A DNA stretch of 35,567 bases from Amoeboaphelidium protococcarum X5 (GCA_023515725.1 JALDTO010000036.1:1-35567), one strand, 5' to 3'. Shown: positions 1 to 13,366, counted from the stretch's first letter. The notes: a model not told the origin generated them from the sequence alone. Numbers and translations: made by a program.

Positions 1-110
1 CCCTAACCCTGCCCTAACCCTGCCCTAACCCTGCCCTGCCCTAACCCTGCCCTGCCCTAACCCTGCCTAACCCTGCCCTGCCTGCCCTGCCCTACCCTGC
101 CCTGCCCTGC
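1..110. repeat. Telomeric array, mixed CCCTAA / CCCTG units (G-strand TTAGGG / CAGGG)
   Basis: The window begins CCCTAA CCCTG CCCTAA CCCTG CCCTAA CCCTG CCCTG. The C-rich strand is at the 5' end, as expected for a left chromosome end. A few degenerate units (CCTAA, CCTG, CCCTA) lie towards the inner edge. Confidence 0.93.
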
Positions 111-241
111 TTTATATCCAAGATGGACGGATAGTAAGACAGGTGTTGAATGATTTCAAAATTGATATCGGCGGTATTGATCCAGAGCAGTTCCAACAAT
201 GGGTGCGTAATCGTGACAAGATTGGCAACGACATGGAATGA
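110..241 (+). pseudogene. 5'-truncated coding remnant abutting the telomere, possibly the C-terminus of an ABC ATPase
   Basis: Open frame LYIQDGRIVRQVLNDFKIDIGGIDPEQFQQWVRNRDKIGNDME-TGA(239-241), with no start codon, followed by AT-rich 3'UTR-like sequence. LYIQDGRIV resembles the terminal strand after the H-loop of ABC ATPases (DRxxxxxDGRIV). Confidence 0.5.
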
Positions 242-339
242 TATTTTCAATTTACTATCATTTCAAGTGCATGCAATTGGAAAAAATATCAACTTCTGAA
301 GATTAATATATGTTTATATGTGAAATCAATCTATTATAT

Positions 340-942
340 TCAAGGCACTACTTTTAAACCCATTGACTTTGCGGTGCTGATTATAGATTTGCAGAGAGAC
401 TACAATTTCACATCTTTATTAACTTGATCTTGCTATTTAATCTTGGCAATTTCGTAAACGTGTTTAAGAGTAACATATAACTCTGACTGCTAATCTTCAC
501 CTTCATCATTGGCATTGGACACGCCATCCAAATCTATAAATGGTTTAGTATGAAGAGGTTACTTGGCTCCCTTAACAGCATTAAGAACAGTCTTGAAATC
601 TACGCCCGCCGCCTATCCACTCTAATTCATGTATATCGACGCCACGGCACGCTTGAGCATATGAGTGGTGGATGGTGTACCGAGATACATAGAGTATGAC
701 TTATCATCTGGATTAACGCGTAAATGAACGCGCACTGGGACTCCACTCTCAAATTTGATATTGCCCATGTGAGGTTCTGCAGCGACGCGTCCACTCGTCA
801 AATCATTGAATTTCTTCACAAAATCAATAGCCTTCAGCCCTTTACTGCCCAGTGCAGGTCCAATTGGTGGAGAAGGAGTAGCCATCTAGGCAGGCACCCT
901 CAATTTAATGAGCATCTTAGATACTTTATCCTTTTTAGACAT
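340..942 (-). CDS. MRPL11: Mitochondrial ribosomal protein uL11m (200 aa, table 6)
   Basis: MSKKDKVSKMLIKLRVPA[TAG=Q]MATPSPPIGPALG...VTLKHVYEIAKIK...SIISTAKSMGLKVVP-TGA. The L11 N- and C-terminal signatures lie in one frame through several TAA/TAG codons. Confidence 0.92.
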
Positions 943-3746: not shown

Positions 3747-3951
3747 TTGCAATAGCGAATCAGTAGATCGCTTAAAGGATCGAACAGCCTGTTGGTTGAC
3801 TGATGCATTTGATCTAAATCGAACATAAGGCTGGATAATCAACACTTTCTATTAGATTAACTTAAGTATGAACCGCGTATCTAATCTTATTTTTTGTGAT
3901 ACAGGTAGATTTAGAGTCTCTGGTGATGTATTTTTAACAATCTCTGTTACG

Positions 3952-3962
3952 GCTGATTGGTT
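3952..3962 (-). promoter_or_regulatory. CCAAT box (NF-Y/HAP-type) upstream of receptor kinase 1
   Basis: Minus strand AACCAATCAGC, about 165 nt upstream of ATG 4125. The same element at the same spacing precedes paralog 2. Confidence 0.5.
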
Positions 3963-4124
3963 GGTTGTGATTACTTTACATATGCCGCTACTGTGATGAT
4001 GCTGACTTCATTCATATCCCTTCTTCCCTCTAATCGTAGTCCAATTTGACTTTAATTCTTAATCTCTGGTAATAGAAAATTACTTTGCTGAGCATTTTTG
4101 AAATCTGAATAGTGAATCTTGGTT

Positions 4125-6902
4125 ATGAGCTTTGCATCCGTGACTTTTGCGAGTGCTAATATAATTTTGAATAGTATTGATTATCGTTAATCAGATGGCA
4201 CCATGTTCATCGCTGGTTAGTCGACAACAGGTATTTCGTACTTGTATCATTATGCTTCCAATGGGACACAGCTATCAATGTAATCCCTATTGCCTAGTGG
4301 CTATTCTTCTTTCGCTATGAAGGCGCTGAAAGTGGATTAAATGACTGGCGAGATAGTTGCCACAGGTTCAGCTATAGCCATTTCTGATTCGCGCTACGTC
4401 GTTGTAGTTTATCGATTCAACGCAGATAAAAGTGTCGCCATGGAAGCATCGTTGCCTTCTTAGAGCGGCGGTGCTCTTCCTTAAGGTTTGGCAATTGATG
4501 GAAGCAGCAGACGTTTGTACGTATCTGGGATAATCGATGGTAACTATGCGGGATACTCGCATAAGGGCGCGTGGGACACATTTCTTGCAGCTATGACTTA
4601 CAATGGCGGTCAACTTTGGATTGTTCAGGAAGGTGCAACTTTAGATGACTATTTGACTAGTATTGAACTTTTTGGCAATAACGTGGTTGTTGGCGGCTAT
4701 TGGAATGATGCAACTTTTTTTGGGCAACCACAAGGTTTTGGTTACCTTGCTTCATACACGACTGCTGGCGTCAAAAATTGGGCTACCAACTTTGTCTTTA
4801 AATCAGCAATTTATTCGGTAATCATTCGCGATAATCTGATCTAAGCATCTGGCGTTTATAATTCTTCGGGTAGCAATTATGAACTCTTTTGGCGGACTTT
4901 CAATCCTTCAACTGGTGCTCTTGTTACATCCGTTTATTAAGCCGGGGATACAGGTAATAATTTGCAGTTCATGAAAGGTACTATTGATCCCGTGAATGAA
5001 ATGAAGGTTTTAGTGGGCACCGGTACGGACGATTTTATTATGACAATTTGCGGTAGTGTTGTCAGTTCACGGTCTCCATTGGCTATCGGAGCAGTTAATG
5101 GTATTGCTTAAGATTTGATTTCGCGCAGATTTTGGGTTGTCGGTGTTTCTGGCTTCAATGGAGTGTTACTTCAAGAGAGTGCTGTCACTCTGCTGGCTCA
5201 AGGTTGTGGAACTACTACCACCGCAGGTGCTACCACTCTCTCTACTACTACAGCGAGTATCATGACAACAACTACAACTACGACTACTACATCGACTGTT
5301 ACTGAAACAATTGTGACTACTACAAGGACTTCTACTCCATCAACAACGACTACAATTAGTTCTACTACGACGACAAAAGCTACCACCACCACCACCACCT
5401 CAACGTCGACAACTACCTTATCTACTACGTCCATTAATGCAACGGCAACACCAACCTCGACTATGCTGTCAACTATTACTAGTATTACGCCAACCACAGC
5501 TGTTACCACGTTTATGATTATGAGTCCTACACCATCGGCGACGACAATCAGCACCTATTCTACTATCATCCCGACGACCAACAGTACATCATCGACTGAA
5601 GTCCCGACAACGTCTACTATTAGTAGCATCGCTAACTCCTCTGATCAGTCTACGGCAACATCTGCATCTATAGCTTTGGCTTTCAACAGCTCTATGGGCT
5701 TTAATGGAAATTTTAGTAGTACTGGTCTATCACATACTAGTGCGTTTGTGCCATCAAGTATCAGTCTTAGCTCTCATTTGTCAAGCCTCAGCTCTAGAGC
5801 TCCCTTTTCTTTTGATTATAACTATGTTGATGGCGGTGCTACTTTGCAGAGTACTTTAACTGACGACAATAATTTGGATGTTGGAGGATAACCACTCAAT
5901 TCTGGAAATTCTAGTATTCTGTCTAATGTTATCGCTGGTGTCTCTGGAATTGTAGCTTTTGTCGTACTTAGCGTTCTGGTGGTACTCTATTTGCAGAGAC
6001 GTAAACGTGCGGTTGCTTAAGCTAAAAAGTAAAAGAGTTCTACCTACGGAGTTATTGCCGGAACAATGTAGATGTCTACAACTTAGACGTCAACTGTCAT
6101 TCCTTCTAGCACTTATTTTAGTTAGACCATGGCTCCGGTTACTGATGTCCTGGCTATCCCGGCATTCCTGATGTTGAAGGCTGGTTATGATTTTAGGCCT
6201 TTAACTTTGCTTGCTCAAACTGGTAATGGATCTCTTTATACTGGCGATCTTCTGAATGACAATGCTCGGCAGAAGTTTGGGGTTTCTACCGTGGTTATCA
6301 AAATAGTGTCTGAAAGTGTGTTAAGTATGGGTGACAGAAACAGAAACTCCTTCTATCAAGAGTTGACTTTGATGTACTTGTTCAAAGATCAGCCTTAATT
6401 TATTAAATTGGTAGGTTATAGTGAGTAGCCAGCGGCTATTGTTATGAAGCATTACTAGCCTGGAAGTTTGAAAGACTTTATATTTGGAGAGCAGCGTGCA
6501 TAAGGTCTGGTTTACAGCAAGTATTAGTTATTACTGATTCTTAAATAACTAGCTATTGGCTACAGACATATGCACAGTATGAACATTGTCCATTTTGATA
6601 TAAAACCTGATAATGTGTTGCTGGAATTCTGTGCTCCATAATTGGTGATGCCGATAATCTGCGACTTTGGAATCACCTAAATTTTCGACTCTGACGCATA
6701 CAAAGTCAAATCACTCTAGATTAGCAATATTCGCGGTTTAAGTTTAATTTACGCTGCACCTGAATTGCTGGTTGAATTTAGGCGTTAATTCTGTAATGGC
6801 TTGTAACGCGAAGCTGGTAAATCAATGGATGTTTACGCGTTCGCTGTGATGATGTTTGAATGCTTAACAAGGTCCAAGGCTAATCATAACTCTTGGTAGT
6901 GA
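4125..6902 (+). CDS. Receptor-like kinase 1: beta-propeller (SBBP-like) ectodomain, Ser/Thr stalk, single TM, C-terminally truncated non-RD Ser/Thr kinase (925 aa)
   Basis: One frame from ATG 4125 to TGA 6900-6902 under table 6. GNYAGYSHKGAWDTFLAAMTYNGGQLWIVQEG; Thr-rich 5210-5760; TM VIAGVSGIVAFVVLSVLVVLYL then QRRKR; kinase motifs VVIK, FYQEL, HFDIKPDN, DFG, YAAPE, DVYAFAV. Confidence 0.88.
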
Positions 6903-7432
6903 ACGAAAGATTGATGAATGAAATAGTGGAACAAAACTAATAAGGGCTTCATATATCAGTCTTGTTTCTGTAAACTATAAATTTCAATAAGATGTAAAAA
7001 CCATTTTGTAGTGCATTACCTCATAAATAACGTGATTAAGTGTGATTTATATGGTTCACCTTGTAGATAAAATTTGATGATCAATAAGATCTGTTCAAAA
7101 TTGCGGCAAGGTATCTTGCAATTAAGCCATCTATTACATTTCATCGACCGCCAATATTATCATTACCAGCACTTCCAATGGAGTGGAATAATAAGAAATA
7201 TCGCAGCATGTCGCGTATCAAATTATAAGCATCTTGATTTCGGATTGATGATGTTTCAAATTTGGAAATCCTATGACTTTGTTTAAAAAGGCTATATAAT
7301 AAAAAAAGGTTCTTTTTAACTATTTGAGATACTTGGTTTCATTAACGATAAAGTATTGCGTGAGTTATTGAACTGGATAACTAAAAGTCTTCACGAATCT
7401 TCTGCGGTTTATTTATAACACTGATTGACGCT

Positions 7433-7443
7433 GCTGATTGGCT
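7433..7443 (-). promoter_or_regulatory. CCAAT box upstream of receptor kinase 2
   Basis: Minus strand AGCCAATCAGC, about 164 nt upstream of ATG 7605. Confidence 0.5.
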
Positions 7444-7604
7444 GACTCTGGACTGATTAAATATGCTGCTGTTGCTATTGCACTGGTGTTGGCACAATCA
7501 TATCACAGTCTTTTTTTACAACATCTCTTTCAGTAAACCTCAAGCTATTAAAATTCATATTTTAAAATCTTTTAAATCCTAAAATAATTTAATATTGAAT
7601 TGAT

Positions 7605-10364
7605 ATGAGCTTTGTATCGCTTCCGTTTAGTGGGACTATGTTGACTAGTATTGCTTTTAGGTAATCAGATGGAACAATGTTTATTGTGGGCCAAGGCGAT
7701 GGCTCATCATATCTCTATCAATATGCTGCAAATGGCACACAACTGTCCAGTTAATCCCTATTGCCTAGTGGATATACTTCTCTTTAGCTGGATGCGGTAA
7801 AGGTGGACTAGACAACGGGCGAGATTGTAGCTACAGGTAACGGAAGATCTACGTCTTTGGCGCGTTTTGTTGTCGTTATTTGTCGATTCAATTCTAATAA
7901 AAGTGTCGCCACATTCGCATCACTGCCTACTTAAAGTGGTGATGCTTTTCCTTATGGCTTAGCCTTAGATCAAGGCAGTAGGCGTGTGTATCTTTCTGGC
8001 CTGGTGGGTGGTAACTTTGCTGGATACACATACAGGGGCGGTCCTTGGGATACTTTTGTTGCAGCTATGGACTACAATGGAAACTAGCTATGGGTTGTTT
8101 AGGAAGGTACAACGGCTGTTGATTAGCTGTATTGTCTTGAACTTTACGGTAGTAACGTAATTGTTGGCGGCCTTTGGAATGCTGTATCTTAGTACAATTT
8201 ACCTTATGGATATTTGGCTTCATTCACTACAGCTGGCGTCAAAAATTGGGCCACTGTTTTTAATTTCAATTCTGCAGTCTATTCAATTACTATTCGTAAC
8301 AATCTGATTGAAGCATCCGGTGTATACAACTCTGCGGGCAGCAACTATGAACTCTTTTGGAGAACCTTCAATCCCTCAACTGGTGCTCTTGACACCTCTA
8401 TATATGCAGCTGGTAATACAGGCATTAATCTGGTTAATATGGTAGGCATCATTGATCCTGTGAATGAGATGAAAGTGTTAGTTGGCACTGGCACAAGTGA
8501 TTTCATTATGAGAATCTGTGGTACTGTTGTCGGTTCAAGATTTGCATTAGCTATCGCCACTGTCAAAGGTATGGCATAAGATTTAAACTCATAAAGGCTT
8601 TGGGTGGTTGGCGCGACTAGTGGTGGTCTTGGAGTTTTGTTGTAAGAGAGTGCCGTCACTAAATTGGCATAAGGTTGTGGTACAACTACTACTACAACAT
8701 CTACTAAGACTACCTCGACTCCTACTACTACTACAACCACAACAACAACTACGACTACCACTACTACAACCACGACAACTACTACGACTACCACCACCAC
8801 TACAACGACGACTACCACTACCACTACTAGTACCACTAGTACCACTACTAGCACGACTACTACCTCGACGCCGACCTCGACTACCACCACCACCACGACT
8901 GCTACGAGTACTACACCGACTACGACGACAACTGCAATTACTACACCAATAACGACATCAACGACAACAACAAGTACACCAACAACGACGACTACTACAA
9001 GAGCAAATTCTACAACGACTGGTCCGATTATCTCCTCTGCAATAAGTACCTCATCCACCACAACATCAGCTGAAGTCTCCTCCTTATCTATCACTACTAC
9101 AAGCTAGATCTACTCGTCGACTCTGACGACGACGTCTATTGATATACTGACATCTACATTCTCGACGTTGACTTCTAGTAATTCAGTGGCATTGGATGGA
9201 TATTCCAGTAGTGGTTGGCACAAACTCCTCAGCACTTCTGTCCCTTCAACTTCCATTGCACTAATTTCATTTGACTATAACTCTAATGGCCAAGGTGCAT
9301 ATTTTCAGAGTAGTGTTGCTGATATTACCTAATCAGATGTTGGAAATGGGCCAGGGTAGCAGATTTATTCCGGTAATAATGGTATATTATCCAGCATAAT
9401 TGCGAGCGTCTCTGGCTCCATTGCTTTGGTAATACTTGGCCTTTTTGCGGTGCTCTTGGTGAAGAGGCGTAGGAGGGCGGTCGCTGGAAGATATAAGAGT
9501 TCAACTTACGGAAGCTCTTTCGCTACAACACATATGCATACGGCTCACACGTCTACTGTCATCCCTAGCAGCACGTATTTTAGTTAGACGTTGGCTCCGG
9601 TTACTGATGTGTTGGCAATACCGGCATTTTTAGTTTTGAAAGCTGGTTATGATTTCAGGCCTGTAACTTTGTTGACTAAGACAGGAAATGGAGCCTTGTA
9701 TACTGGTGATCTTCTCAACAGTAATATTGGTTAGCAGTTTAACATCTCTACTGTGGTTATCAAAATAGTTTCTGATAGTATTTTTAGTATGGGAGATAGA
9801 AGTAGAAACTCCTTCTATCAAGAGTTGACTTTGATGTATTTGTTCAGAGACTAGCCACAGTTTATTAAGTTGGTAGGTTATAGTGAGTAGCCGGCGGCTA
9901 TTGTTATGAAACATTACTAGCCTGGAAGTTTGAAAGACTTTTTATCTGGAGAGCAGCGTGCAGAAGGTATGGTGTATAGCAAGTATTAGCTCTTGTTTAT
10001 TCTTAAATAGCTAGCCATGGGTTACAGACATATGCACAGTCTGAACATTGTCCATTTTGATATAAAGCCTGATAATGTGTTGCTGGAATTCTGTGCTCCA
10101 TATTTGATGATGCCGATAATCTGTGACTTTGGAATCACTTAAATTTTCGACTCTGACGCGTACAGAGTCAAGGCGCTGTAGGTAAGCAATATTCGTGGTA
10201 TAAGTTTTACTTATGCTGCACCTGAACTGCTGATTGAGTTTAGGCGTTAATTCTGTAATGGCTTGTAACGCGAAGCTGGTAAATCAATGGATGTTTATGC
10301 TTTCGCTGTGATGATGTTTGAATGCTTAACTAGGGAAAGAGCTTGTCAAAGCTATTGGCAATGA
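7605..10364 (+). CDS. Receptor-like kinase 2 (paralog, 919 aa)
   Basis: MSFVSLPFSGTMLTSIAFRQSDGTMFIVG...; long poly-Thr stalk; TM IIASVSGSIALVILGLFAVLLV then KRRRR; HFDIKPDN, DFG, YAAPE; TGA 10362-10364. Confidence 0.88.
8681..9000 (+). repeat. Coding ACN trinucleotide (poly-Thr) low-complexity tract, mucin-like stalk
   Basis: Runs of ACT/ACC/ACA/ACG codons. These explain the spurious poly-Val ORF on the minus strand. Confidence 0.9.
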
Positions 10365-10648
10365 AAGTTTGATATGATTTAATAACAGTAATGATAATAC
10401 GTTTTATGCATACTTTCATTTTTGTTTACTTCACATGGACAATGCAATCAACCACCTGGTGATAACGCCAGATTTCTGGAAAGTCTATTTTTGGAATAGC
10501 AACTCGATGGCTGTGGTTACCTCATGTGTGCTCCGTTTTTTCTCTAATCCTTGTTGATCCTTTAATATTGACATTATTGATAATTATTGATTGTTTACTT
10601 TATATTATCTTTATTGAAAAGACTTTGGATTGATATTAAATTTTGGAA

Positions 10649-13366
10649 ATGAGCTTCAATCAGCAGACTGTGGCAGGTGCTCGCGTATTGAAAGACATTG
10701 CTTATAGACAGTCTGATGGCATCATGTTCATCATAGGCGACTCTTCTGACAACAGAAATATTCTTTATTAATACGCTTCAAATGGCACGTAATTGAAAAA
10801 TATGGTTTGGCTTCCTGGTGGTCTAACTAGCAGTGCCACTGAAACACTCGTCATTGATCAGGCGACGGGCGATTTGTTCATGGTTGGAAATGGTCTTTCA
10901 GGTAGTTTCTACGCGATGACGGCTTTCCGCTTTCACCCTAATGGCACTGTTGCATGGACAAAGGTGACTACAGCATCTGGTGGCAGTACTTTTCCCTCTG
11001 GTTTGACTTTGTATGAGTCTCAGGAAAAGCTGTTTTTCAACGGACACACCTCGGGGTCATTTCCTGGCTATAGCAACCAAGGCTAGTAGGATGGCTTCAT
11101 TGCTGGTTTGGATTACAATGGCACTTACTTGTGGATCAAGTAAAGCGGAACATCGCAAGTTGACATGATGTATGATCTCACGCGTTATGAAGATCGTCTC
11201 ATTGCTGGTGGTAGGTGGAATAGCGTATCATCAACGAATCAGTTTGGATTTCTGGCTTCTTATAACGTCAATGGTACTTAATAATGGTTCAATGTTTTTG
11301 CGTTCAACTCGGCTGTTAATACGATTTTGATTGATCAGGGACTTATATAAGTTAATGGTGTCCGTCAATATAGCGGATTGTCGTATGAGATTTTCTGGTA
11401 TACACACAATATCATTGATGGCTCGTTTAATTCAACAATTTACTGGCCTGCTAGTACTGGAGTGAATTTTGGGTCTGCGAGCTCAATGATTGATCCCGTG
11501 AATCAGATGAAGATTATAGGGTCGTCTTACTCCACTGGCTCAAGCTCTGTAATATTTACCATCTGCTAGTAAAATGTTAGTCAACGATTTCCTCTCACCA
11601 TGAATTACCTCTATGATGTTGCGGAGGATCTTAATACGCGAAAAATCTGGATTGTTGGCCAGCAGTCCAGTGTGGGAGCCTTGGCAATCGAGAATTCTGG
11701 TGCTTTGCTGGCCTTAAGCTGCTCCTTAAGTTCATTGAGTAGTACCTAAACCACCACAACACTTACTGCATCAAATTCTCGTAGTATGACGACATCTACT
11801 ACCACAACATTTCCTGCATTAAGCTCGTCGTTATACTCAACTTCCACCTCACTTTTGTCACTAATTGTTACCACCACAGATTCTACAACTTCCGTGCCAA
11901 TTACTACTATAATAAGTACAACATCTGGTAAAATCACATCGTCTACTTTGCTTGAAAGCTCTATTGCCACTGCTACTACTTTGTCCACTGCTAACTCTGT
12001 CGCCACTAACACCACCAGTTCTAGTGCAACTACCTCCACTACAACTATCATTACTGCCTCTTCTGATACTGCTACCACCACCACACTTAATCAAGTAACG
12101 TCGACTGGTAATAGTCAATAAGTGAATTCGCCAACGACGTCTTTTTCACCAAGTGTCACTAATCTAATTAGCCATACTAGTGAGGCTTCAAGTGCTCTTG
12201 TTGGGCCTTCAAATGCTGATATAGCCAGCGGATCAGTCATTAGTTCAAGTGGCTTATATGTGTAATCAATCTCATAGTCAAATGGTCTTTAATTTGTGCT
12301 CCTTTCACACAGTCTCTCTTCTGTATTAACGGCAACAACTTCTGGTGTATATTCCTCTGTAAATTAGGATGGCAATTAGGTGGTATCAGCAAATGGCACT
12401 TCTCTTACTTTACTTCTGGCGATCATTGCTGGTATCATTGCATTCATAATCATCTGTCTATTGTTGATGCTCACGTATAGAAGAAGGACTTATCGTAAAA
12501 AAGTCACACAAGTCAGAGCGTCGGCCAATGCCACTTCAACGACTGTTGTGGTAGCATTAACTGGGTCGTAAGCTACCTCAACCACTATGTTTACCAGTAC
12601 TTATGCTCCAACCACCGATATCTTGGCAATCCCAGTATTTTTGAGGCTGTAGGCTGGCTTTGGATTTAGACTGAAAAATCTGCTGACAGTCACTGGTAAT
12701 GGCTCCTTGTACTTTGGCGACATTCTGGACAAGAACGCGCGCCAGCTCTGTGGAGATTAGCAAGTGATAGTCAAAGTTGCTGCGGACAACTTGGAAGCCA
12801 TGTCTGATAGAGCTCGTAATGCTTTCTTTTAAGAGTTAGTGCTGATGAATCTATTCAAAGACTAACCACAATTTATAAAACTATATGGTTATAGTGAAGT
12901 TCCTGCGTGCATCCTTATGAGATACTACCCACTGGGTAGTTTGAAAAGCTATATGCTCGGGCAAAGTGTTATTAGTCATGTTTCTTATAGTAAGACCCAG
13001 CTGGTTTATATCTATAAGATGCTCGCTGCAGGGTATTCATTCATGCATCAGAAGAACATCGTCCACTTTGACATCAAGCCTGACAATGTTCTGCTTGACT
13101 ATAGTGGAAACGATCGATTGATGCCGATTATTTGCGATTTTGGTATCACCCAAGTGTTCGATACTAATGCTTATAAAGTAAAAGCTCTGCAGCTGAGTAA
13201 TGTAAGAGGCTTAAGTTATGTGTACGCAGCACCCGAGTTGATCGTCCAGTTTAAGAGCGCGTTTGCGGAAGGTCTCTAGAGCGATAGGTGCAAGTCGATG
13301 GACGTGTATGCCTTCTCGATGTTGATATACGAGACGCTGAACAGAATTTATGCTTACGATAAGTGA
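10649..13366 (+). CDS. Receptor-like kinase 3 (more divergent paralog, 905 aa)
   Basis: MSFNQQTVAGARVLKDIAYRQSDGIMFIIG...GHTSGSFPGYSNQGQQDGFIAGLDYNGTYLWIKQSGT; S/T stalk; TM LLLAIIAGIIAFIIICLLLMLTY then RRR; HFDIKPDN, DFG, YAAPE; TGA 13364-13366. Confidence 0.88.

What the first reader, a model, noticed from the sequence alone, without database searches (positions are those of the whole stretch)
4125..13366. Telomere-proximal tandem array of non-RD receptor kinases with bacterial-type beta-propeller ectodomains
Seen: three intronless head-to-tail paralogs, each with a ~360 aa beta-rich domain, a variable Thr/Ser stalk, one TM with a basic stop-transfer, and a kinase with HFD in place of HRD and DIKPDN (Ser/Thr type). 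Ectodomain motifs (GxTxGxFxGYxxxGxxDxFxAxxDxNGxxLWxxQxGT) resemble SBBP seven-bladed propeller repeats of bacterial surface proteins. Established: non-RD receptor kinases are associated with pattern recognition in plants and animals, fungi mostly lack single-pass receptor kinases, and a receptor-like kinase expansion has been reported for aphelids. Inference: a diversifying host- or surface-sensing receptor system, perhaps built from a horizontally acquired propeller.
Basis: partly seen in the sequence, partly recalled or inferred. Interest (0 to 1): 0.8.

Follow-up and report, generated by a model that had tools for sequence, protein, structure and literature searches.

The report
Three aphelid propeller receptor-like kinases
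Three neighbouring genes of an alga-parasitising relative of fungi encode membrane proteins with a bacterial-style propeller domain, a sugar-rich stalk and a shortened kinase; they are a divergent branch of a receptor-kinase family already reported for these organisms, and oddly lack an export signal.

Summary
Read that way, three head-to-tail ORFs of 925, 919 and 905 codons lie 4 kb from a telomere. Each has a ~360-aa beta domain, a Thr/Ser stalk, one TM helix with a basic stop-transfer, and a non-RD (HFD) Ser/Thr-type kinase.

- **Ectodomain:** it is homologous to prokaryotic SBBP propeller repeats. Two blades fold confidently. Seven blades are inferred, not shown.
- **Family:** the trio is a divergent subfamily of a larger SBBP receptor-like kinase family in this genome. 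This scan already described that family on other DNA.
- **Selection:** the genes are under purifying selection (dN/dS 0.07-0.23), so "diversifying" is not supported.
- **Position:** the homeologous trio lies inside a 1.1-Mb contig, so telomere proximity is incidental.
- **Horizontal origin** of the propeller is plausible but untested.

- The kinase ends about 10-20 residues after helix F.
- This subfamily has no canonical signal peptide.
- The kinase halves of copies 1 and 2 show gene conversion.

Interest is moderate.

The parts
1..110 (.). Telomere repeat (CCCTAA / CCCTG units) at the contig end
   Evidence: Read directly. Colinearity with C146 starts at window base 110.
4125..6902 (+). RK1, 925 codons plus TGA (27 TAR=Gln codons)
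   Evidence: Code-6 ORF. Homeolog at C146:895210-897999 with 93% aa identity in the ectodomain and 90% in the kinase. Covered by RNA-like contigs.
4125..5210 (+). RK1 ectodomain (aa 1-362): degenerate SBBP-type beta-propeller. The canonical repeat is at aa ~118-175. Cys309 and Cys361 are conserved.
   Evidence: phmmer of 4485-4841 finds 2781 hits, and all ten top hits checked carry SBBP PF06739. AF2 pLDDT 90.8 with 8 strands; best PDB match is the CylK propeller. hhalign against a prokaryotic SBBP profile gives 98.6%, E 1e-15.
5211..5927 (+). RK1 Thr/Ser-rich stalk (239 aa, 53% S+T)
   Evidence: dN/dS 0.81 against the homeolog.
5928..5987 (+). RK1 transmembrane helix, followed by YLQRRKRAV
6156..6899 (+). 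RK1 kinase (aa 678-925): TGNGSLY, VVIK, FYQEL, HFDIKPDN (6591-6614), DFG (6663-6671), APE (6756-6764), MDVYAF. It ends 19 aa after that motif.
   Evidence: A contig at 6777-7326 is colinear across the stop, and run X5 has no depth at 7000-7400.
7605..10364 (+). RK2, 919 codons plus TGA. Ectodomain 7605-8681, stalk 8682-9380, TM 9381-9461, kinase 9618-10361 (HFD at 10053).
   Evidence: Homeolog at C146:891770-894487. Contigs at 7456-8806 and 7535-8768 are colinear.
10649..13366 (+). RK3, 905 codons plus TGA. Ectodomain 10649-11725, stalk 11726-12394, TM 12395-12475, kinase 12629-13363 (HFD at 13064).
   Evidence: Pfam Pkinase 4.7e-16 on 12866-13276, model positions 71-169 of 263. Homeolog at C146:888781-891492.

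Best explanation
These are three functional, expressed paralogs of an aphelid-specific family of single-pass receptor-like kinases. They are read in the UAR=Gln nuclear code that is documented for Amoeboaphelidium protococcarum; the organism itself was not identified by a direct test. Each protein has five parts. First, an N-terminal, strongly diverged SBBP-type beta-propeller of about 360 aa: one canonical repeat, one weaker repeat, and the rest recognisable only by colinearity with seven-repeat prokaryotic propellers. Second, a mucin-like Thr/Ser stalk, presumably O-glycosylated. Third, one TM helix with a basic cytoplasmic flank. Fourth, a ~55-aa juxtamembrane segment. Fifth, a compact non-RD (HFD) Ser/Thr-type kinase that keeps Lys, Glu, Asp, Asn, DFG and APE but stops shortly after helix F, so it lacks helices G-I. 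The likely mechanism is inferred: the propeller binds an extracellular ligand, plausibly a glycan or wall component of the algal host. Clustering then brings the kinases together, and signalling runs through juxtamembrane or partner phosphorylation rather than activation-loop phosphorylation, as in other non-RD receptor kinases. The trio is an old divergent subfamily (A-type, HFD, no signal peptide) of the larger SBBP-RLK family (B-type, HCD, with signal peptide). It was duplicated with the genome, and its position next to a telomere is secondary.
For: Genetic code and ORFs: and PMC5304391. Kinase: Pfam Pkinase at 59.4 bits against a cut-off of 31.7, with catalytic motifs conserved in all 12 family members aligned. 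Propeller: phmmer finds 2781 hits at E<=1e-3, and all ten top hits checked carry SBBP and are prokaryotic or metagenomic. AF2 of aa 121-239 gives pLDDT 90.8 and two four-stranded blades; Foldseek's best match is the CylK propeller (TMq 0.74, E 5e-6), followed by other propellers. hhalign against a prokaryotic single-propeller profile gives 98.6%, E 1e-15, and is colinear over 13-358 against 40-428 of 439. Family link: hhalign of the A-type against the B-type ectodomain gives 94-95%, E 1e-7. SBBP Pfam hits lie ~2 kb upstream of kinase hits at more than 15 loci. Function retained: dN/dS is 0.07-0.23 in the ectodomain and 0.08-0.13 in the kinase. Expression: contigs are deep over the genes and shallow or absent between them, and exact matches occur in a freshwater metatranscriptome. 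A conserved Cys pair and a conserved NGT sequon in the ectodomain fit a lumenal or extracellular location.
Against: There is no canonical signal peptide. Maximum hydrophobicity is 1.1-1.8 against 2.6-3.6 in B-type paralogs, no conserved upstream exon exists, and the ORFs are closed by TGA 2-5 codons upstream of the ATG. Pfam's own SBBP model does not score the pieces, even at E<=10. The C-terminal half of the ectodomain gave a useless model (pLDDT 39), so a closed seven-bladed propeller is inferred. A kinase without helices G-I and with a degenerate glycine loop may be inactive. Ligand, topology and activity are all untested. The runs that look like RNA have no library record, and contigs break in the stalk, so no single contig joins the ectodomain to the kinase.
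Confidence: 0.65

Rival explanations
1. The proteins are surface adhesins or scaffolds whose kinase-like domain is a pseudokinase. The propeller and stalk bind the host surface. The truncated cytoplasmic domain only docks partners or the cytoskeleton and transfers no phosphate.
For: The kinase lacks about 50 C-terminal positions of the Pfam model, covering helices G-I. It is non-RD. The glycine loop is degenerate (TGNGSLY). The N-lobe piece alone gets no Pfam hit.
Against: The VAIK Lys, helix-C Glu, HxD Asp, Asn, DFG and APE are conserved across 12 paralogs of two subfamilies. Kinase dN/dS is 0.08-0.13.
Confidence: 0.2
2. The A-type proteins are not cell-surface receptors. Without a signal peptide the large N-terminal domain stays in the cytosol, or the protein is not membrane-inserted in the expected way. 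The subfamily would then have taken an intracellular role.
For: There is no hydrophobic N-terminal core, clearly so in RK3. No upstream coding exon exists. B-type relatives do have signal peptides.
Against: The basic residues on the C-terminal flank of the TM predict a cytoplasmic kinase and an exoplasmic N-terminus. The mucin-like stalk, a conserved Cys pair and a conserved NGT sequon fit an extracellular domain. The ectodomain is under strong constraint.
Confidence: 0.1
3. The three ORFs are decayed pseudogenes full of stop codons, and the apparent proteins are an artefact of reading through stops.
For: Under the standard code each gene carries 23-27 in-frame TAA/TAG codons.
Against: There are no frameshifts and no in-frame TGA in six ORFs of ~900 codons. 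TAR aligns mainly with TAR and CAR-Gln. dN/dS is well below 1. UAR=Gln is published for this lineage (PMC5304391). TAA/TAG also lie inside nearly all kinase-domain matches elsewhere in the genome.
Confidence: 0.02

Closest known systems
SBBP-propeller receptor-like kinases elsewhere in this genome (B-type: C181, C137, C212, C192, C264, C155...). They are part of the aphelid RLK expansion cited in PMC10608142 (its ref. 9, which I could not read).
   Same: Same order of parts: propeller, Thr-rich stalk, TM, non-RD kinase. Same kinase end 8-20 aa after helix F. Ectodomains are homologous (hhalign 94-95%) and kinases are 29-36% identical.
   Different: The A-type has HFD where the B-type has HCD. 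It has only one or two recognisable SBBP repeats against three or four. It has no signal peptide. Only six genes exist, at two homeologous loci.
Prokaryotic SBBP (PF06739) repeat proteins, e.g. MCR6624504.1 (Ca. Culexarchaeum) and MCO5142164.1 (Oligoflexia). The nearest solved fold is the beta-propeller of CylK (7fh6, 7ron).
   Same: Repeat motif with 30-40% identity per repeat. Colinear with ~440-aa proteins in which Pfam scores up to seven SBBP repeats. Same blade structure.
   Different: None of the 152 retrieved relatives has a kinase. Most blades of the aphelid domain have lost the motif.
Plant CRINKLY4 receptor kinases (propeller ectodomain; bioRxiv 10.1101/2020.08.10.245050 abstract, seen) and Mycobacterium tuberculosis PknD (NHL propeller sensor; from memory).
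   Same: A beta-propeller serves as the extracellular sensor of a single-pass Ser/Thr kinase.
   Different: The propeller families are unrelated (WD40-like or NHL). Those kinases have a complete C-lobe. CR4 has a signal peptide. PknD has the kinase at the N-terminus. No sequence relationship was found here.
Non-RD pattern-recognition receptor kinases of plants and animals (e.g. FLS2, XA21, IRAK1; general knowledge)
   Same: The Arg before the catalytic Asp is absent, in a receptor-type protein.
   Different: There is no specific sequence affinity. The best PDB matches are generic (CDPK, TAK1, TYK2, Aurora at E 1e-10 to 1e-6). The C-lobe is truncated.

Membership tests
Eukaryotic protein kinase domain (Pfam PF00069 / PF07714) | Significant match to the family model | tested here: met
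   Piece 12866-13276 scores 59.4 bits on Pkinase (cut-off 31.7) and 52.8 bits on PK_Tyr_Ser-Thr.
Eukaryotic protein kinase domain (Pfam PF00069 / PF07714) | Catalytic residues: VAIK Lys, helix-C Glu, HxD Asp, Asn, DFG, APE | tested here: met
   VVIK/VIVK, FYQEL/FFQEL, HFDIKPDN, DFG and APE are present in all three genes and their homeologs.
Eukaryotic protein kinase domain (Pfam PF00069 / PF07714) | Complete C-lobe (subdomains X-XI, helices G-I, conserved Arg of XI) | tested here: not met
   The match ends at model position 169/263, and only 29 residues follow. The ORFs stop 17-19 aa after MDVYAF. There is no joint and no downstream coverage in run X5.
Non-RD kinases | No Arg immediately before the catalytic Asp | tested here: met
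   HFD in all six A-type copies and HCD in six B-type copies.
SBBP beta-propeller repeat (Pfam PF06739) | Match to the curated Pfam model | tested here: not met
   No SBBP hit on the stop-free pieces, even at E<=10. No C36 site is among the 20 genome matches. The full-length protein could not be scanned, because the tools take no read-through.
SBBP beta-propeller repeat (Pfam PF06739) | Sequence homology to bona fide SBBP proteins | tested here: met
   phmmer E-values reach 3.5e-44, and all ten top hits checked carry SBBP. A repeat HMM scores 46-61 bits at aa ~118-175. hhalign gives 98.6%, E 1e-15.
SBBP beta-propeller repeat (Pfam PF06739) | Four-stranded blades that form a closed (seven-bladed) propeller | tested here: inconclusive
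   Two blades are modelled at pLDDT 90.8 with propeller matches. The C-terminal half gave pLDDT 39. Seven blades rest on length and colinearity only.
Type I single-pass receptor kinase | Cleavable N-terminal signal peptide | tested here: not met
   Maximum KD(10) is 1.1-1.8 against 2.6-3.6 in B-type paralogs. No upstream exon exists. No dedicated signal-peptide predictor was available.
Type I single-pass receptor kinase | One TM helix with a basic cytoplasmic flank between ectodomain and kinase | tested here: met
   A hydrophobic stretch of 20-27 residues is followed by RRKR, KRRRR or RRRTYRKK.
RLK/Pelle (IRAK) kinase family of plants and animals | Specific phylogenetic or sequence affinity of the kinase domain | tested here: inconclusive
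   The PDB search gives only generic kinases at E 1e-10 or weaker, with none of the family among the top hits. No tree was built.

The most novel reading that the evidence does not exclude
The A-type trio is a signal-peptide-less offshoot of the family whose ~600-aa propeller-plus-mucin N-terminus reaches the cell surface by a non-classical route, or has been redeployed inside the cell. Across the whole SBBP-RLK family, a protein kinase that ends after helix F and lacks helices G-I is catalytically active, which would define a new minimal form of the eukaryotic kinase fold used by receptors.
Probability: 0.25. Interest if true: 0.7.

Novelty: new variant of a known kind. Interest (0 to 1): 0.45.

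Why it matters
Fungi largely lack single-pass receptor kinases. Aphelids are their sister group and find and invade algal cells. A receptor family built from a prokaryote-type propeller and a minimal kinase is a candidate for host recognition, and it bears on which signalling tools were present or lost at the origin of Fungi. The C-lobe-less but highly constrained kinase tests how much of the kinase fold is needed. The missing signal peptide in one subfamily poses a concrete membrane-topology question. However, the RLK expansion is already published and the family was already described by this scan, so this window adds one divergent subfamily and no new system.

Tried and rejected
- **Standard-code ORFs:** only fragments appear.
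- **Pfam on stop-free ectodomain pieces:** no hit, even at E<=10.
- **Upstream signal-peptide exon:** short hydrophobic mini-ORFs exist upstream of each gene. They are not conserved between homeologs (indels not in threes), RNA-like contigs are colinear there, and an in-frame TGA lies 2-5 codons before each ATG. Rejected.
- **Downstream exon completing the kinase:** there is no joint, a contig runs colinear over the RK1 stop, X5 has no depth at 7000-7400, and only 285 bases separate RK2 from RK3. Rejected.
- **AF2 of the C-terminal ectodomain half:** with an 8-row alignment it gave pLDDT 39 and is unusable.
- **A first alignment for that job** misplaced repeat-shifted rows and was discarded.
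- **Subtelomeric diversification:** rejected by synteny with an internal locus and by low dN/dS.
- **Kinase group assignment from PDB hits:** only generic matches.
- **The primary aphelid genome paper** (Curr Biol 2022) is not held, so what it says about these genes could not be checked.
- **Whole-protein searches** (Pfam, word search, fold of the full ectodomain or kinase) were left out, because the tools take no protein read through a stop. Code-6 translations were used only inside scripts.
Full report
**Genetic code and gene models**

With the bacterial or standard code the window has only three ORFs over 150 aa, and the finding's region is broken into fragments. Reading frame by frame shows long frames interrupted only by TAA/TAG, never by frameshifts. 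Each is followed by TGA.

Their 77 TAR codons align in the other copies with TAR 132 times, CAR-Gln 77 times and the next residue (Ser) 27 times. None of the six ORFs (window plus homeologs) has an in-frame TGA. UAR=Gln is published for Amoeboaphelidium protococcarum (PMC5304391). The assembly (23.6 Mb, largely duplicated) fits that species as described in PMC10608142. I did not identify the organism by a direct test.

**Anatomy**

All three proteins share the same order of parts:
- **Beta-rich N-terminal domain:** about 360 aa, with a conserved Cys pair (309/361 in RK1) and a conserved NGT sequon.
- **Stalk:** 223-239 aa with 49-64% Ser+Thr.
- **TM helix:** 20-27 hydrophobic residues followed by RRKR, KRRRR or RRRTYRKK.
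- **Juxtamembrane segment:** about 55 aa.
- **Kinase:** TGNG(S/A)LY, VVIK/VIVK, F(Y/F)QEL, HFDIKPDN, DFG, APE and MDVYAF.

The stop-free kinase piece 12866-13276 matches Pfam Pkinase at 4.7e-16 (59.4 bits, cut-off 31.7), covering model positions 71-169 of 263. HFD makes it non-RD, and DIKPDN is the Ser/Thr-type catalytic loop. The best solved relatives are generic kinases (CDPKs, TAK1, TYK2, Aurora; E 1e-10 to 1e-6). No affiliation with the plant/animal RLK-Pelle group is shown.

**Truncated kinase**

Only 29 residues follow the Pfam-matched part in RK3. All three ORFs stop 17-19 residues after the subdomain IX motif MDVYAF, so about 50 model positions (helices G-I, subdomains X-XI) are missing.

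This is not a gene-model artefact:
- A contig lies colinear from 6777 to 7326 across the RK1 stop.
- No joints were found anywhere in 3800-9799.
- Run X5 has no depth at 7000-7400.
- Only 285 bases separate RK2 from RK3.

Six B-type paralogs from three other contigs end at the same point. Related kinases with complete domains do exist in the genome. An earlier first-reader note (s1-546869) and an earlier follow-up on another array (s1-555405) say the same. I tested it independently here.

**Ectodomain**

Pfam finds nothing on the stop-free pieces, even at E<=10. Other evidence shows it is an SBBP-type domain:
- **Exhaustive sequence search:** phmmer of RK1 aa 121-239 against 1.84 billion representatives gave 2781 hits at E<=1e-3 and 453 at E<=1e-10.
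- **Identity of the hits:** all ten top hits checked carry SBBP PF06739, with up to nine scored repeats. Those with names are archaeal or bacterial "SBBP repeat-containing proteins". The ESM Atlas lookup agrees.
- **Where the signal comes from:** mainly one canonical repeat at aa ~118-175, scoring 46-61 bits against a repeat HMM built from the hits. A second, weaker unit lies at ~175-231, with only traces elsewhere at about 50-aa spacing.
- **Profile-profile comparison:** the six-sequence ectodomain profile against prokaryotic single-propeller proteins gives 98.6%, E 1e-15. It is confident over aa 21-224 and, in greedy mode, colinear over 13-358 against 40-428 of 439.
- **Structure, N-terminal part:** AlphaFold2 of aa 121-239 with a 48-row alignment gave pLDDT 90.8 and eight strands, which is two blades. 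Foldseek's best PDB matches are the propeller of CylK (TMq 0.74, E 5e-6), then designed, PQQ, BamB and NHL propellers.
- **Structure, C-terminal part:** the C-terminal half (RK2 homeolog aa 200-355, 8-row alignment) gave pLDDT 39, all-beta but unusable.

So "SBBP-type propeller" is supported, while "seven blades" is inferred from length and colinearity.

**Family context**

The exact ectodomain occurs at only two places in the genome:
- the window, and
- C146:888.8-898.0 kb, which holds the same three genes in the same order.

Weak kinase-less relatives with a TM anchor sit on C233 and C214.

The kinase has well over 100 relatives. At more than 15 loci a kinase hit lies about 2 kb downstream of an SBBP Pfam hit, often in tandem arrays. 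These B-type genes have the same architecture plus clear signal peptides. Their ectodomains are homologous to ours (hhalign 94-95%, E about 1e-7, in register from the N-terminus).

The trio is therefore a divergent subfamily of a larger SBBP-RLK family. This scan had already described that family on other DNA of this genome (s1-570544, s1-555405). [quoted passage not shown] I could not read that paper.

**Telomere and evolution**

The window is colinear from base 110 to at least 21877 with C146:902013-880001, at 88.5-90.7% nucleotide identity. C146 is 1.10 Mb long, so the homeologous array lies about 200 kb from the nearest contig end. The telomere at 1-110 therefore sits at a point that is internal in the other copy. 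Telomere proximity is a property of this chromosome end, not of the array.

| Comparison | Ectodomain | Kinase | Stalk |
|---|---|---|---|
| Homeolog dN/dS | 0.07-0.23 | 0.08-0.13 | 0.41-0.81 |
| aa identity, RK3 vs RK1/2 | 39-41% | 56-58% | 35-36% |

The genes are constrained, not diversifying, at domain scale. Site-level positive selection cannot be tested with these data. The paralogs are old: dS between RK3 and RK1/2 is far higher (1.6-2.9) or beyond what the Jukes-Cantor correction can estimate.

The kinase halves of copies 1 and 2 show concerted evolution. RK1-RK2 dS is 0.54 in the kinase against 1.38 in the ectodomain. On C146 the two kinases are 95% identical, against 85% here. This agrees with note s1-547047.

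**Expression**

One recorded freshwater metatranscriptome (X1) holds exact-match contigs inside RK1 and RK2. Three runs of organism A have no library record. They cover the genes at depths of about 50-1400, while the RK1-RK2 spacer is at 0-113, which is an RNA-like profile. All contigs are colinear with the genome. They break in the repetitive stalk, so no single contig joins ectodomain and kinase. The single uninterrupted ORF and continuous coverage are the evidence for one transcript.

**Missing signal peptide**

All six A-type proteins start MSF... and have no hydrophobic core. The maximum Kyte-Doolittle mean over 10 residues is 1.1-1.8, against 2.6-3.6 in six B-type paralogs. Three checks rule out a hidden coding exon:
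- Each ORF is closed by TGA 2-5 codons upstream of the ATG.
- The small hydrophobic upstream ORFs are not conserved between homeologs.
- Contigs run unspliced over the 5' ends.

By alignment, the A-type N-terminus corresponds to the mature N-terminus of the B-type proteins. The positive-inside rule, the mucin-like stalk, the Cys pair and the sequon still favour an exoplasmic N-terminal domain. How about 600 residues would cross the membrane without a signal peptide is unexplained. This agrees with note s1-547046.

**Horizontal origin**

The nearest relatives outside the genome are prokaryotic, and none of the 152 retrieved proteins has this kinase. That fits a propeller of prokaryotic origin fused to a eukaryotic kinase. 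However, no eukaryote-rich database or tree was available, so this remains an inference. I put it at roughly even odds.

**Verdict**

The object is a divergent, signal-peptide-less, three-gene subfamily of an aphelid receptor-like kinase family with prokaryote-type propellers and a C-lobe-less non-RD kinase. Most of this is already known or already found by this scan, so interest is moderate.

Noticed in passing
window 1-345; C146:902013: Colinearity with the homeologous contig C146 begins at window base 110, directly after the telomere repeat, while C146 runs on for about 200 kb more. This chromosome end looks like a break healed by telomere addition at an otherwise internal site.
   Followed up: partly
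window 6156-6899 and 9618-10361; C146:891770-897999 (L002): The kinase halves of copies 1 and 2 evolve in concert. RK1h-RK2h are 95% identical in aa against 85% for RK1-RK2, and RK2 is closer to RK1h (91%) than RK1 is (90%). The ectodomains follow orthology.
   Followed up: partly
window 7605-8681 vs C146 RK2 homeolog: The RK2 ectodomain is much more diverged from its homeolog (dS 0.80, 80% aa identity) than RK1 (dS 0.15) or RK3 (dS 0.25). This may reflect an old conversion or a different history for that segment.
   Followed up: no
window 8883: A 3-base deletion in the poly-Thr stalk of RK2 is seen in runs X2 and X5 but not X3. This is a stalk-length polymorphism or cross-mapping from the homeolog.
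   Followed up: no
window 7463-7535: An upstream ATG at 7463 opens a long out-of-frame ORF that is not conserved in the homeolog. The deepest run's contig starts at 7535, just after a strong acceptor-like TTTCAG. The transcription start or a 5'-UTR intron here is unresolved.
   Followed up: partly
window 3949-3960 and 7436-7444: A conserved GCTGATTGG (inverted CCAAT) lies about 160 nt upstream of the RK1 and RK2 start codons and is kept in both homeologs.
   Followed up: no
L008:2601-4199 (C233) and L009:5152-6957 (C214): A homeologous pair of genes encodes a signal peptide, an SBBP propeller with five recognisable repeats, a TM helix and a short acidic tail, but no kinase. They are the nearest relatives of the A-type ectodomain.
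   Followed up: partly
L010 (C1:1-5684) and L011 (C238:1-950): Further SBBP-RLK gene copies sit on very short contigs (5.7 kb and 0.95 kb). These are probably collapsed or unplaced repeats of the C181/C137 arrays.
   Followed up: no
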